Positions 52,080 through 64,000 of a stretch of 64,000 nucleotides of DNA are shown piece after piece. Under the pieces are notes generated by a model. The model ran no database searches, had not been told where the DNA came from, and saw nothing but the letters and a program-made list of their open reading frames with translations. The stretch comes from Kudoa neothunni (taxonomy: Eukaryota; Animalia; Cnidaria). The stretch is from assembly GCA_964304625.1 (NCBI GenBank), contig OZ199840.1, forward strand, positions 3,297,431-3,361,430, in the 5' to 3' direction. How positions within the stretch are numbered: the first letter of the stretch is position 1; the number at the start of each line of letters is the position of its first letter. A program made the translations under genes and the position numbers.

Positions 52080-52965
52080 TTAGATGTTGTATTTGTTATT
52101 AATACTAATCTGAGGATGGATTAGTAACAGATCATCTCGAGTTGAGCGATTATTATCATTCATTAGCTTTTCATCGTATTCCATCAAATTTCTAAGATTT
52201 TCGGTTTTTACCGACAGTTTCGTGTTCAGGTAATTCCCCTCTACCACATTCTTCATTAGTTTCTCATCAATTTGACAAATTTGAGTGGTAGGTGCGATAT
52301 AGCCATATTTTTCGCTTTGATATTCGCATGGTTCAATGCAGAGAGATGTAGTTATAATAATGATTCGATAATCCATGGGGATTATCTCGTCGGAAATGTA
52401 AATTGAGTTTTCTTTGTTTAGTTCCTCTATTAGTGCAATTTTGAGTTGATTACTAGATTGCTTATACCGTTCTTTACATTCCAACATCATTTCATTTGAG
52501 GGATTTTGGCGCCACTTCGGTTGATCACCATCCTCATCAACTTCAAAGATGGCTTGACTTTTAGCTGTTCCATATCATCTACAGTCTCATCACTCAAGAA
52601 TAGCAAAGTAACACTGTTGGGTATGTTTCAAAGTACTCATCGATTACTTCCGTGGCTTCTAGAAGGAGATTTTCACGAGATAAAATCTCGGCAAAAATCT
52701 TCATAGAGCGCCTTGAAACAACGAGAGATACTTCCGTACAAAATCAGCAATAGTTTTATCAAAGTAACTCAGTTTAGCACCACATGATTTCAATTCTAAA
52801 TATTTAGAATAACGTACATAAATCATCGGCGAAAGTTCGTGGTCGAAATATCTCAACGTAGAGATGTCACACAAACTCCGCAGTTGAAGCGTTAGAATGC
52901 TCTCATCGTATATTAGACTAGTATAACAACATTTTTCTTTTTCGCAGCGCAAAAAAGAAAAACGT
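52080..52965 (-). mobile_element. Unit C: 5' part of a B-family RLE non-LTR retrotransposon, truncated by BEL/Pao
   Basis: Peptides are homologous to unit B (STLRYFDHEL..YSKYLELKS..ADFVRKYLSLFQ; IP.DYR..ITT...IEP.EYQS.KY.YIA). Confidence 0.8.
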
Positions 52966-53000
52966 CGTCCTATATGGGGATCGAACCCATGACCTCGAGA
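52966..53000 (-). pseudogene. tRNA 3' half (probably tRNA-Lys) at the B/C junction
   Basis: Minus strand reads TCTCG AGGTC ATGGG TTCGATC CCCAT ATAGGAC G, then ACGTTTTTCTTTTTT. Perfect T-arm; no D-arm or 5' half. Confidence 0.85.
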
Positions 53001-61100: not shown

Positions 61101-64000
61101 TTGACTTGAATTTGATTTTTCATATGTTTAGATGATTTAGGTGGCTCTTTTGGCTTGAATAATGGTACATAGTAATAGCCCAACTGTTTGGCATGCTTTT
61201 TAGATATATCAATGAATTTTTTGTATAATGTTTTAATGTCCAACTGATTATTTTGGTTAACAAGTTGTGTGAGTTCGTCCGATGCAAGCTTAAGCTTGTC
61301 TGCTCGTTCTTCTTTACGTTTACGTTGTTTTTCAGCATACGTAAGGTTTCCTTCATTATTATCAGCAGAATGCTTCTGTGAATTAACATAATTTTGATTT
61401 AGGTTCGTTGGAATAGTTGGAATATTAGACTGGGATTTAATTGGAGGTTTATTGATTAATTTGGTTGGAACTGTTGTTTTTTGGATTATTTTAGGTTTCA
61501 ACATGGGAATATTGCTTTGTTTAATATTTGATACAACCGAAGTGCCTATTGATTTTGATATTTATATTGATATGTTTAGGATTTTTGTTAATTTTGTCAG
61601 CTAGGGTTTGCAATTCAAGGTCAGGACTTACCACCTTTGGAAAGTGCTTTTTAGATGGCGCTGGTTGTTGCGATGATTGCGATGTTGGATTTGAGATTGA
61701 AATTGGTTTTGATTGGATATGCGCCTCACCACTACTTTTAATTATGATTGGATTAATTGGAATATTTGTAGATTTTTTAGGTTGATTAGAATTAATAGTT
61801 GGCGGCTTATTTGTGTTTTTATTGCGTGGTTTGTTAGTATTAGATTGATTCTTCGAGATAGAAATAAGTCGATTAACTTCCTGAGAAATTGTAGTAGTTT
61901 TATTTGATTTGGAATTATTCGGTGTTTGGAAATCTTCAATAATCAGCGAGTTATCCTCCATAGCCGAGTAGTAGAGGGTGTCCTCTTGATTATTGTGAGC
62001 ATTGTATGTTGGAGTTTTTTCAGGAGGTTCATAATATATTATTCCAAATGATGAGTTTGATATATTTTCTTGCGAATCAGGTTCTTGCTCAATTAGTTCT
62101 TGTTTGATGTATAAGCAATCACCTCCAGATTGTGGCGGTGGTTTAACATCCGTAATTATCACATCATCGTCAATCTCTTGATTGGTATTAGAATTGTTAA
62201 TAGGATCTTCCAAAATAGCCATATTCAAATTGTCCGATTGGTCCATAAGTGCTTTAAGATCATTCCGGTAAATTTGGTGCTCCATATCCAGTGCAAGCAT
62301 TTTTTGCGATTTCCACAATACAGCGTCATTCGACGCAAATGTTACTTCTTGAATATTGATTTCTTCCGGATCAGGGGGTGCAATTTCATTGTTGTTATTT
62401 GAATTATTTTCCCTCATTATTTGTTCCAACTCTAGGCGATCTCTTTCGAAATCCGCCCACCATCTAGCCTCCTTTGCGTTTTGTAAGCGGAAATTCGTAT
62501 TGTTGATATTTACGTTGTTAAATTTAATCAACTCATTTTGATTATTAATGTTAATATTGATATTGATATTGTTAACATTATTAATATTGTTGACATTGTT
62601 GGATTGCAAATTATATTGAATAGTTGTCGGAGAGTTAGAATTTATGGATGCGCATGGTGTAGAGTTGAAATGTGAAAATTGGATATTGTTAGAATTAGAA
62701 TTGGTGCATGTCGGTGTTACGTCTTTTTTATATTTTTCTAATGCACCAATAGGTCTCAGATTAGTTCTATTAGTACCAACATCAGCAGCAGAATTATGGT
62801 TGTTATTATCACTAATATTTCCAACTAATGTCGGTTTATTATTATCAATTAATCGTTGATGTCGTTGTTGATTTTGTGGATTAACAACCTTTGGAATGTT
62901 CAATTGGTTATGATCAACGATGGCGTTCGAATTAGTCGTACGACTACTTAAAATATTCGTCGCATATCGTCGTAGGTTGTTGAAAAAAGAAATATCATTA
63001 TTTTGTTGGTTTTCAGAGTTGTTATTAACATTATTATTATTATTATTAATGTTAGGTTGAATTGTTGATAATGTTTCAACGACTGAATTATCCATAAGCA
63101 AATTGTCGTTGGGAACAAATTGCAAAGTAAACTCATTAGCATCAATAAAAGTGGATTTTCCAGTATTTAAATTCGTTGTTACATCAACATTTGGGTCGTT
63201 GTAGTAAAAGATTGCAATATTCTTATCAGCTGCGACGGAAGTGTTACATCACTGTCAGTTGAATTTTCATATTTAACAATAATATTATCATTTGCGGCGT
63301 TAGATTGGACATTTGAATTATTTGAATCATTTTCATCATCAATTTGAATAGTTTCATCAACATTTGGCGCATTATTTGAAGAATCATAACAATATTGAGA
63401 ATTAATCTTATCAGTTGCAACAATGGTAACATCATTCGGAATTTCATTTGAAATTTCATTTAAAGTAGAATCATCATCATTTATAACTGTAACATTGCCA
63501 AAATTACCATCAAAAGTATCAACCTGATTAGTATTAATGACATTAGTATCATCAATATTGATGTCATTATTTGATAAAGTAACATTGCCATTATAAACTA
63601 GCGATTTTTCCATACAAAAAGTCAGCTCATTTACATCATTAAACGCACTATTTAGCAATCCGCTGCTAGATGAATTACCTGAATAGTAGCGGTAATCTGG
63701 CGATTGTTGTTCGGGGATTTCACTATCAATATCAAGTAGTAAATTTTGTTCAGTCAAATTCAAGTGTTCATAAAGAATATCTTCAATAGAGGTTGAATCC
63801 ATGGGTTCGATGTTAACATTTTCATCTTCAATTGGTAAAGATAAGTCGTTATCTCTAATCACCTCTGTATTGTTCAAAATATATTGGGAATTTTCGCATG
63901 TACGAGCATTCAAAGAATATGAAAAGTTTGGTTGGTCCATCATGTTCATCCATAACATTTTCCGGTGATTCTATTACATTGTTTGTTGCTTGATCATCAT
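58101..64000 (-). mobile_element. Unit A: defective RLE non-LTR retrotransposon (NeSL/R5/Utopia-like); 5' end beyond the window
   Basis: Long Asn-rich N-terminal region. RT: SAGTDGI, QKGF..DGC.EH, WLDIQKAFDSIPH, GVRQGCPISPLIFN, AFADD, YKYLG. CCHC: CRHC..ETLGHVLGGC. RLE: RHD, KPDIV, IEVA, KSEKY, GALGS. Frameshifts throughout. Confidence 0.93.

What the first reader, a model, noticed from the sequence alone, without database searches (positions are those of the whole stretch)
52080..64000. Tandem array of RLE non-LTR retrotransposons joined by tRNA-Lys 3' halves: candidate new tRNA-specific retrotransposon group
Seen: on the minus strand the order is unit A, tRNA 3' half (58100-58062), unit B, tRNA 3' half (53000-52966), unit C. 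Both complete 3' ends stop at the anticodon loop of the same tRNA and have no poly(A) tail. Known: RLE-encoding non-LTR elements are often sequence-specific (R2 and R5 for rDNA, NeSL for SL RNA, Utopia for U2, YURE for tRNA-Arg). Inference: A and B target the anticodon region of tRNA-Lys. I do not know this target for the clade, but novelty is untested. The Lys assignment rests on the 3' half only.
Basis: partly seen in the sequence, partly recalled or inferred. Interest (0 to 1): 0.9.

Follow-up and report, generated by a model that had tools for sequence, protein, structure and literature searches.

The report
Retrotransposons that rebuild their tRNA target
The stretch is a stack of site-specific jumping genes inserted one after another into the genome's only tRNA-Lys(CUU) gene, and each arrives with its own copy of the tRNA's back half plus a stop signal, so the essential gene is rebuilt every time instead of destroyed.

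Summary
On the minus strand, unit A ends at a tRNA 3' half (58062-58100). Degenerate unit B ends at a second half (52966-53000). "Unit C" is only a 5' fragment of about 0.7 kb.

The intact tRNA-Lys(CUU) gene heads the array just beyond the window, and it is the only copy in the 40-Mb assembly. The 13.4 kb at 50589-64000 is repeated across a 200-N gap, which is probably an unmerged contig overlap.

Genome-wide there are 54 related RT matches. At least 15 tRNA genes each head such an array, with the same layout: intact tRNA, then an element starting with two T-runs, then a tRNA 3' half, then the next element.

In the tRNA-Gln(UUG) array, variants of the 3' half travel with the element on their right. 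Three 100% identical units sit next to different variants. So the half is donor-borne and not a target-site duplication.

The clade has RT plus CCHC plus restriction-like endonuclease and no N-terminal zinc finger. Its nearest outside relative is a U2-flanked, Utopia-type element. Two other metagenomic organisms carry it with the same targets.

tRNA-specific RLE elements are already known (NeSL-1_TV, LIN15_SM, LIN25_SM). Rebuilding a single-copy target was not found in the papers searched.

First readers noted the same layout at other loci of this genome only.

The parts
58101..64000 (-). Unit A: the 3' 5.9 kb of the head element. It is about 6.8 kb in the copy that is contiguous with the tRNA. 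Here it is cut by the 200-N gap at the window end.
   Evidence: ORFs. Sequence. The contiguous copy with its 5' block and intact tRNA upstream is shown.
59970..60419 (-). Reverse transcriptase core of unit A.
   Evidence: Pfam RVT_1, E = 5.9e-19.
58765..60003 (-). 412-aa ORF of unit A covering RT motifs, thumb and linker. It was used as the genome-wide probe.
   Evidence: 54 matches in the genome. The intact relative matches solved R2 proteins at E = 5.6e-77, against 2e-24 for L1 ORF2.
58280..58789 (-). C-terminal CCHC knuckle and restriction-like endonuclease (PD..D..K) of unit A.
   Evidence: Translation. tblastn gives 33-56% identity to all lineages. The same motifs appear in intact relatives. 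There is also a weak zf-RVT hit.
58062..58100 (-). tRNA-Lys(CUU) 3' half number 1. It runs from the second anticodon base to the 3' end and lies between A and B.
   Evidence: 38 nt are 100% identical to the intact gene.
58048..58058 (-). Two T5 runs (a Pol III terminator) that open unit B.
   Evidence: The same feature is homologous in families sitting at different tRNAs.
53001..58061 (-). Unit B, a degenerate full-length element. Its 5' block (57347-58061) is 96% identical to A's 5' block. Its body is about 40% aa identical to A, with many stops.
   Evidence: (RT matches carrying 4-8 stops).
52966..53000 (-). tRNA-Lys 3' half number 2, decayed. It has three substitutions, two of which break acceptor pairs.
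52951..52962 (-). T-runs that open unit C.
52245..52965 (-). Unit C: a 3'-truncated 5' block only, 66% identical to the A/B block. The sequence after it is unrelated.
50589..64000 (.). Stretch repeated at 99.7% identity on the far side of a 200-N gap. Probably an assembly overlap.

Best explanation
[quoted passage not shown] Each encodes one ORF with RT, a CCHC knuckle and a restriction-like endonuclease. The clade is related to the Utopia/NeSL group. Its lineages each home to one tRNA gene.

Shown by the sequence:
- Insertion is at the 3' edge of the anticodon loop (canonical positions 35-40), in the tRNA's orientation.
- Each full unit starts with a copy of the tRNA's 3' half followed at once by two or more T-runs. 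It ends, without poly(A), against the previous 3' half.
- The array is therefore: intact tRNA, then A, then a dead half, then B, then a dead half, then the C fragment. The youngest unit sits next to the gene.
- The working tRNA is a chimera. Its 5' half is chromosomal. Its 3' half and Pol III terminator come from the most recent insertion.

Inferred mechanism:
- The endonuclease nicks the bottom strand in the anticodon region, and that end primes reverse transcription.
- The template RNA carries the tRNA 3' half at its 5' end. It probably also carries it at its 3' end, through read-through into the next half.
- Both junctions are then set by homology, as in R2 with its 28S co-transcript.
- Because the target is a single-copy essential gene, only insertions that rebuild it survive. 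All insertions therefore pile up at one site.
For: Site specificity:
- 54 RT matches cluster in arrays.
- Every resolved 3' end abuts a tRNA 3' half that is 34-38 nt identical to the intact tRNA heading that array.
- Eight heads were read and score 58-70 bits on RF00005: Lys-CUU, Lys-UUU, Gln-UUG, Gln-CUG, Trp, Cys, Phe and Met.
- Seven more tRNA hits lie by their coordinates where a head would be. Four of them lie 69-145 nt upstream of element N-termini.
- Several families with different 3' UTRs share one site.

The 3' half is donor-borne:
- In the Gln-UUG array, units U1, U2 and U5 are 100% identical over 5595 bp.
- The half to the right of U2 nevertheless differs at two acceptor positions from the halves to the right of U1 and U5.
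- The same variant type recurs before another unit that has the same 5' UTR start.
- All three changes turn G.U pairs into A-U pairs with the fixed 5' half, so the variant halves look functional.

The terminator is element-borne: the T-runs and following bases are homologous between families at Lys-CUU, Lys-UUU and a third tRNA, and between families at Phe and a class II tRNA.

The target is single-copy:
- Full-length tRNA-Trp and tRNA-Lys(CUU) each match once in the assembly, plus their halves.
- The Lys-CUU and Phe anticodon arms each occur once.

Other support:
- No 5'-truncated unit is seen among about 30 units.
- In one Lys-UUU lineage, the only in-frame ATG ahead of the conserved N-terminal domain lies in the T-stem.
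- Intactness declines away from the head.
- Independent DNA contigs give about 6x depth on the element and branch at tRNA position 37/38.
- Two other organisms carry the same architecture with the same targets.
Against: - No RNA data could be obtained. Three metatranscriptome runs laid no reads. The 5' end of the template RNA is therefore inferred only.
- How Pol II would start at or upstream of the tRNA half is unknown.
- The Gln-array argument rests on one array in one assembly. Gene conversion between units could mimic co-inheritance of the half and the 5' UTR.
- The single-copy status rests on BLAST and pattern searches of one assembly, not on a full tRNA census. Only 63 of about 2,556 RF00005 candidates were scored.
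- The model does not explain the 3'-truncated 5' fragments at array tails. It also does not explain the 5' block shared by A and B.
- The protein region that recognises the tRNA gene was not identified.
Confidence: 0.72

Rival explanations
1. Same site-specific elements, but the upstream 3' half is a long target-site duplication. The bottom strand is nicked in the anticodon region and the top strand at the tRNA's 3' end (34-47 bp stagger). The RNA itself starts at the T-runs.
For: There is precedent in the same group. The LIN15_SM junctions in S6 Fig of PMC4640811 imply roughly 40 bp of tRNA-Arg duplicated. Reptile Utopia makes 20-bp TSDs. This model makes retargeting easy, and it fits the element-borne terminator.
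Against: - The order of half variants in the Gln-UUG array would need the working gene to change at two bases and back, while 5.6-kb units stayed 100% identical.
- The duplicated length tracks the tRNA end: 34-38 nt, but longer (about 46-48 nt by eye, not counted) for a class II tRNA.
- 5'-truncated units would still rebuild the tRNA under this model, yet none is seen.
- One lineage needs the T-stem ATG.
Confidence: 0.15
2. The elements insert just downstream of intact tRNA genes, and the tRNA-like 3' half is the element's own 3' tail. The anticodon loop is never cut.
For: It would also give an intact tRNA followed by an element followed by a half. It would further explain why array tails are followed by non-tRNA DNA.
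Against: - Identical units U1, U2 and U5 carry different halves on their right, so the half is not part of the left-hand unit.
- Families of one array start the half at different tRNA positions.
- In every lineage the half matches the local tRNA exactly.
Confidence: 0.05
3. One old insertion was amplified only by unequal crossing-over or segmental duplication, or the array is an assembly artefact. There was no repeated site-specific insertion.
For: - A 13.4-kb, 99.7% identical duplicate across a 200-N gap is present at this locus.
- Exchange between halves could duplicate whole units.
- U1 and U2 are adjacent and identical.
Against: - A, B and C differ from one another, with bodies about 40% aa identical.
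- The Gln array interleaves at least five families with different 3' ends at the same site.
- 15 separate tRNA loci and two other organisms show the same junctions.
- An independent read set supports the copy number and the branch point.
Confidence: 0.04

Closest known systems
Utopia (U2 snRNA gene-specific RLE non-LTR elements, NeSL clade; PMC4640811)
   Same: - It has the same domain order: RT, then CCHC, then RLE.
- The best-scoring outside relative of this clade (P0005, 30% identity, E = 3.6e-105) sits between an intact U2 gene and a U2 copy lacking its first ~38 nt. That is the same layout of an intact target in front and a 3' part behind.
- The paper reports intact U2 genes upstream of Phytophthora Utopia copies, tandem insertions, and surprise at survival on a low-copy target.
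- In L070 the live and dead U2 copies differ by two compensatory stem changes. This hints that the 3' part is donor-borne there too.
   Different: - The target here is tRNA genes, at the anticodon loop.
- No N-terminal zinc fingers or protease were found.
- The elements here carry T-run terminators.
- The targets here are single-copy.
- The paper explained the intact upstream U2 by deletion of the 5' fragment within U2 arrays. That cannot apply here.
NeSL-1_TV (tRNA-Pro), LIN15_SM (tRNA-Arg), LIN25_SM (tRNA-Glu): NeSL-related tRNA-specific families
   Same: They are RLE elements inserted at a fixed site inside tRNA genes. The LIN15_SM 3' end carries a TTGTATAAT-like motif, also found at the 3' end of many lineages here. 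LIN15_SM also duplicates part of the tRNA.
   Different: - The tRNAs differ, and so does the site: LIN15_SM inserts 5' of the anticodon stem.
- Its upstream tRNA copy stops in the T-arm, so the gene is not rebuilt.
- There are three single families there, against a radiation over at least 15 tRNA genes in one genome here.
- RT relatedness could not be tested, because no Repbase sequences were available.
R2 (28S rDNA-specific)
   Same: R2 proteins are the closest solved structures (E = 5.6e-77). R2 is also the model for target-primed reverse transcription in which target sequence on the RNA sets precise junctions.
   Different: This clade falls outside the zinc-finger-bearing R2 hits in the RT tree. 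It has no ZF or Myb domain. R2 inactivates one copy of a multicopy target and does not rebuild it.
Bacterial phages and integrative elements that integrate into tRNA genes (general knowledge)
   Same: The incoming element carries the 3' part of the tRNA gene, so the gene stays intact after integration. A dead partial copy is left at the far end.
   Different: Those elements use tyrosine or serine recombinases acting on DNA att sites. Here the machinery is RT plus endonuclease acting through RNA, in a eukaryote.
Dictyostelium TRE and yeast Ty1/Ty3; Dada DNA transposons
   Same: They are associated with tRNA genes.
   Different: TRE and Ty elements land outside the gene at a set distance, guided by Pol III factors. 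Dada uses a DDE transposase with 6-7 bp TSDs. None of them rebuilds the gene.

Membership tests
RLE-bearing non-LTR retrotransposons (R2 group sensu Kojima) | Reverse transcriptase of the non-LTR type. | tested here: met
   Pfam RVT_1 at E = 4e-34 and 5.9e-19. R2 proteins are the best PDB matches.
RLE-bearing non-LTR retrotransposons (R2 group sensu Kojima) | C-terminal CCHC motif followed by a PD-(D/E)xK endonuclease, with no APE domain. | tested here: met
   The motifs were read in translations of unit A and of intact relatives. They are conserved across lineages. There is no Pfam APE hit. Catalysis was not tested.
RLE-bearing non-LTR retrotransposons (R2 group sensu Kojima) | Sequence-specific insertion with a precise 3' junction. 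| tested here: met
R2 clade | N-terminal zinc finger(s) and Myb domain; 28S rDNA target; RT groups with R2. | tested here: not met
   No ZF or Myb domain by Pfam or motif scan. The target is tRNA. The clade is separate from the ZF-bearing R2 hits (SH-aLRT 100).
NeSL clade (NeSL, Utopia, YURE, R5/LIN) | RT phylogeny places the element with NeSL-1, R5 or Utopia reference sequences. | tested here: inconclusive
   The best outside hit is a U2-flanked, Utopia-type element. However, the three-way split among this clade, the Utopia-like hits and the R2-like hits is unresolved in the tree. No named reference sequences were available.
NeSL clade (NeSL, Utopia, YURE, R5/LIN) | One to three N-terminal zinc fingers; a Ulp1-like protease in nematode NeSL. 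| tested here: not met
   The N-terminal conserved domain folds as three long helices, with no structural match.
Known tRNA-specific NeSL-related families (NeSL-1_TV, LIN15_SM, LIN25_SM) | Same tRNA and same insertion position. | tested here: not met
   Their targets are Pro, Arg and Glu, and the LIN15_SM site lies 5' of the anticodon stem. Here the targets are Lys, Gln, Trp, Cys, Phe, Met and others, at positions 35-40.
Pol III-directed tRNA-proximal retrotransposons (TRE, Ty3) | Insertion outside the tRNA gene at a fixed distance, independent of which tRNA it is. | tested here: not met
   The junctions lie inside the tRNA, and each lineage keeps to one tRNA.

The most novel reading that the evidence does not exclude
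A retrotransposon clade lives on single-copy essential genes by overwriting them. Its RNA is terminally redundant for the tRNA 3' half, and this half both guides integration by base pairing and becomes part of the working tRNA. About a third of the host's listed tRNA genes would then be host-parasite chimeras whose 3' halves and terminators evolve with the elements. Retargeting to a new tRNA would need mainly a change of the carried half, which would make the system a natural, programmable, gene-preserving RNA-templated inserter.
Probability: 0.3. Interest if true: 0.92.

Novelty: new variant of a known kind. Interest (0 to 1): 0.8.

Why it matters
Site-specific retrotransposons are thought to survive by hitting multicopy targets where losing a copy is harmless. 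Here the targets appear to be single-copy essential tRNA genes, and the element survives by rebuilding the gene.

- This explains the strict head-to-tail stacks ordered by age.
- It also explains the absence of 5'-truncated copies.
- It turns the host tRNA into a chimera whose 3' half is dictated by the latest insertion.
- It offers a different reading of the published puzzle of Utopia elements sitting behind intact U2 genes.
- It describes natural proteins with open 1,775-1,901-aa reading frames that insert about 5.5 kb at a defined site without destroying the gene. That is of interest to work on R2-based gene insertion.

Tried and rejected
- Ribozyme at the 5' end: an Rfam search at E <= 1 over nine head loci found only the tRNAs. 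The window has nothing at gathering score.
- Expression and RNA ends: three RNA runs laid zero reads, so this was no test.
- N-terminal domain: no Pfam family and no usable ESM Atlas hit. The AlphaFold model (pLDDT 63) shows three long helices with no Foldseek match at E <= 0.001.
- Pol III transcription of the whole element: rejected, because T5 runs occur throughout the sense strand.
- Unit C continuing at window 43700-44700: the hits there match in all frames and are low-complexity Asn-rich sequence. No RT follows.
Seven heads are therefore known by coordinates only.
- Literature: five searches found no paper on tRNA-rebuilding retrotransposons.
- Assigning the clade against Repbase NeSL, R4, R5 and HERO references was not possible with these tools.
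Full report
**What is in the window**

All of the following is read on the minus strand.
- Unit A runs from the window end at 64000 to 58101. It has an Asn-rich N-terminal region and an RT core (Pfam RVT_1). These are followed by a 412-aa RT/thumb ORF, a CCHC knuckle and a PD..D..K endonuclease.
- A's 3' UTR ends without poly(A) against 38 nt (58063-58100) that are identical to the 3' part of a tRNA. Two T5 runs follow.
- Unit B (58061-53001) has the same order of parts. 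Its RT matches carry 4-8 stop codons.
- B ends against a second, slightly decayed half (52966-53000), again followed by T-runs.
It is 66% identical to the A/B 5' block. Unrelated sequence follows, and no RT is found further down.
- ARAGORN and Rfam find no complete tRNA in the window.

**Beyond the window**

The window is C3:3297431-3361430 of a 40.3-Mb, four-contig, roughly 30% GC assembly.
- Directly after the window end lie 200 N. After them comes a 13.4-kb stretch that is 99.7% identical to window 50589-64000.
- Two contig ends that overlap by 13.4 kb and are joined with a gap are the signature of an unmerged overlap. I therefore take the locus as a single array.
- The copy beyond the gap runs on into a ~760-bp 5' block, and then into an intact tRNA-Lys(CTT) at C3:3375901-3375973 (ARAGORN; RF00005 65 bits).
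- The real array is: intact tRNA-Lys(CUU), A (6.8 kb), dead half, B (5.1 kb), dead half, C fragment.

A's RT ORF finds 54 matches. Many lie in open frames of 1,600-2,200 aa, and they cluster in arrays.
- In every lineage whose 3' end is in hand, the element ends against a tRNA 3' half, and the halves come from different tRNAs.
- A profile of the conserved N-terminal domain located the 5' ends. Tiling the loci showed an intact tRNA at the head of each array.
- Eight heads were read: Lys-CUU, Lys-UUU, Gln-UUG, Gln-CUG, Trp-CCA, Cys-GCA, Phe-GAA and Met-CAU. All score 58-70 bits.
- Seven further RF00005 hits lie, by coordinates, where a head would be: four lie 69-145 nt upstream of N-terminal matches, and three lie 2-3.6 kb upstream of RT matches on the same strand.
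- So 15 of the 38 tRNA genes listed head an array. That list is a lower bound, because only 63 candidates were scored.
- The internal halves are 100% identical to the head tRNA over 34-38 nt. They start at canonical positions 35-40, and the exact base depends on the family to their left.
- Several families with unrelated 3' UTRs share one site. This shows repeated independent insertion rather than mere duplication.

**What each unit starts with**

Right after every head tRNA and every half come two or more T-runs, then a short leader, then the ORF.
- These T-runs and the bases after them are homologous between related families sitting at different tRNAs on different chromosomes. Examples are the B/C-type family behind Lys-CUU, Lys-UUU and a third tRNA, and another type behind Phe and a class II tRNA.
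- The terminator is therefore part of the element, not the native tRNA flank.
- T5 runs also occur through the body, so Pol III cannot make the full RNA.

**Is the upstream half a target duplication or carried by the element?**

The tRNA-Gln(UUG) array decides this.
- Units U1, U2 and U5 are 100% identical over 5,595 bp.
- The halves after U1 and U5 read like the head. The half after U2 differs at two acceptor positions and is followed by a different leader start. The same leader type elsewhere in the array is again preceded by a variant half.
- Under a staggered-cut duplication, all halves are serial copies of the working gene. The gene would then have had to change twice and revert while 5.6 kb stayed unchanged.
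- If the half belonged to the left-hand unit, identical units would carry identical halves, and they do not.
- If each unit brings its own half at its 5' end, the pattern follows directly.
- All three variant bases convert G.U pairs into A-U pairs with the fixed 5' acceptor strand. These halves therefore look like parts of a tRNA that once worked, not like random decay.
- By contrast, the old C half in the window has changes that break pairs.

Further support for a carried half:
- No 5'-truncated unit is seen among about 30 units.
- The length of the half tracks the tRNA end, including in a class II tRNA.
- In one Lys-UUU lineage with open frames of 1,808-1,901 aa, the only in-frame ATG ahead of the conserved N-terminal domain lies in the T-stem.

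**Copy number of the targets**
- The full tRNA-Trp and tRNA-Lys(CUU) sequences each match the assembly once, plus their own halves.
- The anticodon arms of Lys-CUU and Phe occur once at up to one mismatch.
- The Gln-UUG arm occurs once exactly, with three one-mismatch sites elsewhere.
- The targets therefore look single-copy. That explains why all insertions stack at one place and why only tRNA-rebuilding insertions are seen.
- Intactness falls with distance from the head. In the Gln array, U1-U6 are open or nearly so, while U7 and U8 are broken. At Lys-CUU, A is better preserved than B, which is better preserved than C.
- An independent DNA read set gives about 6-fold depth on the element relative to the flank. 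Its contig graph branches at tRNA position 37/38.

**Relatives**
- The nearest proteins in public data are four metagenome proteins at 46-78% identity. Beyond them there is a drop to 31% or less.
- Their contigs show the same tandem layout with tRNA halves and T-runs. By T-arm and acceptor sequence the targets match their sister lineages here: Asn-like, Lys and Gln.
- In an RT tree, all of these form one clade (SH-aLRT 100). It is separate from the zinc-finger-bearing R2 hits and from a second group.
- That second group contains the best outside hit, P0005. P0005 sits between an intact U2 snRNA gene and a U2 copy lacking its first ~38 nt, so it is a Utopia-type element.
- The Utopia paper (PMC4640811) records intact U2 genes upstream of Phytophthora Utopia copies and explains them by deletion.
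- In L070 the live and dead U2 copies differ by two compensatory stem changes. A donor-borne 3' part would predict this.
- The same paper lists NeSL-1_TV (tRNA-Pro), LIN15_SM (tRNA-Arg) and LIN25_SM (tRNA-Glu). It describes YURE as weakly U2-satellite-associated, not as tRNA-Arg-specific.
- Its S6 figure shows a TTGTATAAT-like 3' end in LIN15_SM, as in many lineages here. It also shows a partial tRNA duplication that does not rebuild the gene.
- The proteins here lack N-terminal zinc fingers, Myb and protease domains. Their conserved N-terminal domain is a three-helix unit with no structural match.

**Mechanism**

Shown:
- The site, the orientation and the unit boundaries.
- The terminator and the 3' half are donor-borne.
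- Insertions stack at the head.

Inferred:
- The endonuclease nicks the anticodon region and the nick primes reverse transcription.
- The RNA bears the half at its 5' end and, by read-through, at its 3' end.
- Both junctions are set by homology, as in R2.
- Non-rebuilding insertions are removed by selection.

Unknown:
- The promoter.
- The protein part that reads the tRNA gene.
- The origin of the 3'-truncated 5' fragments that end all six resolved arrays. Two of these are 97.6-99.4% identical to their neighbour.
- The ~750-bp 5' block shared by A and B.

**Verdict**

The targeting inference is right, and the tRNA is Lys(CUU). The claim of a first tRNA-specific RLE group is not right. What appears undescribed in the papers searched is a radiation of such elements that rebuild single-copy tRNA genes with their own 3' half and terminator.

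First readers of this scan noted the same layout at other loci of this genome. I tested the Cys, Phe, Lys-UUU and Lys-CUU cases here.

Noticed in passing
C3:3361431-3361630 (directly after the window end) and window 50589-64000: A 200-N gap is flanked by two 13.4-kb stretches that are 99.7% identical, differing mostly by single-base indels. This looks like an unmerged contig overlap that falsely doubles the A-B-C array.
   Followed up: partly
window 52245-53003; C1:3791037-3791637; C3:5641592-5642560; tails of L012, L013 and L018: Every array whose far end is in hand stops in a 3'-truncated copy of the first 350-970 bp of an element. A sharp break into unrelated DNA follows. Two of these fragments are 97.6-99.4% identical to the neighbouring unit. 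No model tried explains this.
   Followed up: partly
window 57347-58061 versus C3:3375174-3375938: A and B share a ~750-bp 5' block at 96% identity, although their bodies are only ~40% aa identical. The high identity ends abruptly within still-homologous sequence. This looks like a conversion or template-switch tract.
   Followed up: partly
50-110 nt after the tRNA end in 9 of ~13 lineages, e.g. window about 52878-52886 (unit C): A conserved nucleotide motif, TCTAACGAT, is read in different frames in different lineages. It is therefore a cis signal, not coding conservation. It looks branch-point-like and is followed by an AG within 15-45 nt.
   Followed up: no
L041 about 1470-1485, the other Gln-array leaders, L073 and L074: GCTAAC, then T5, then AG lies just upstream of the start codon in the Gln lineage, and it is kept in a second organism. 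It resembles a 3' splice or trans-splice acceptor.
   Followed up: no
window 58086 (ATG in the T-stem); Lys-UUU array; L072: In the Lys lineages the frame is open from an ATG inside the tRNA T-stem into the element ORF. In one Lys-UUU family it is the only in-frame ATG ahead of the conserved N-terminal domain.
   Followed up: partly
C2:7568381-7611208: The tRNA-Gln(UUG) array holds eight units of at least five families. Three units are 100% identical, and two further families have open frames of 1,788-1,791 aa. Several families are therefore probably active on one single-copy site.
   Followed up: yes
C2:7568381-7568453: The working tRNA-Gln(UUG) has two G.U pairs in its acceptor stem. An internal dead half would make both pairs A-U. 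The currently dominant family seems to have imposed a less well-paired 3' half on the gene.
   Followed up: partly
window about 55655-55875: About 230 bp of non-coding sequence interrupts unit B's RT between two similar short motifs. It may be a small secondary insertion.
   Followed up: no
L039 (C2:1817563-1821228) and L037 (C1:2999925-3003443): Two more distant RT lineages have no tRNA-like sequence after their 3' ends. They may have another target.
   Followed up: no
L070 (ENA ERZ25072490 contig): A Utopia-type element lies between an intact U2 gene and a U2 copy lacking ~38 nt. The two U2 copies differ by two compensatory changes in one stem.
   Followed up: partly
window 62500-63600 and 43700-44700: Long Asn-rich, low-complexity coding-like sequence occurs in unit A and again 8 kb below unit C. 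The similarity holds in all frames and was judged to be compositional.
   Followed up: partly
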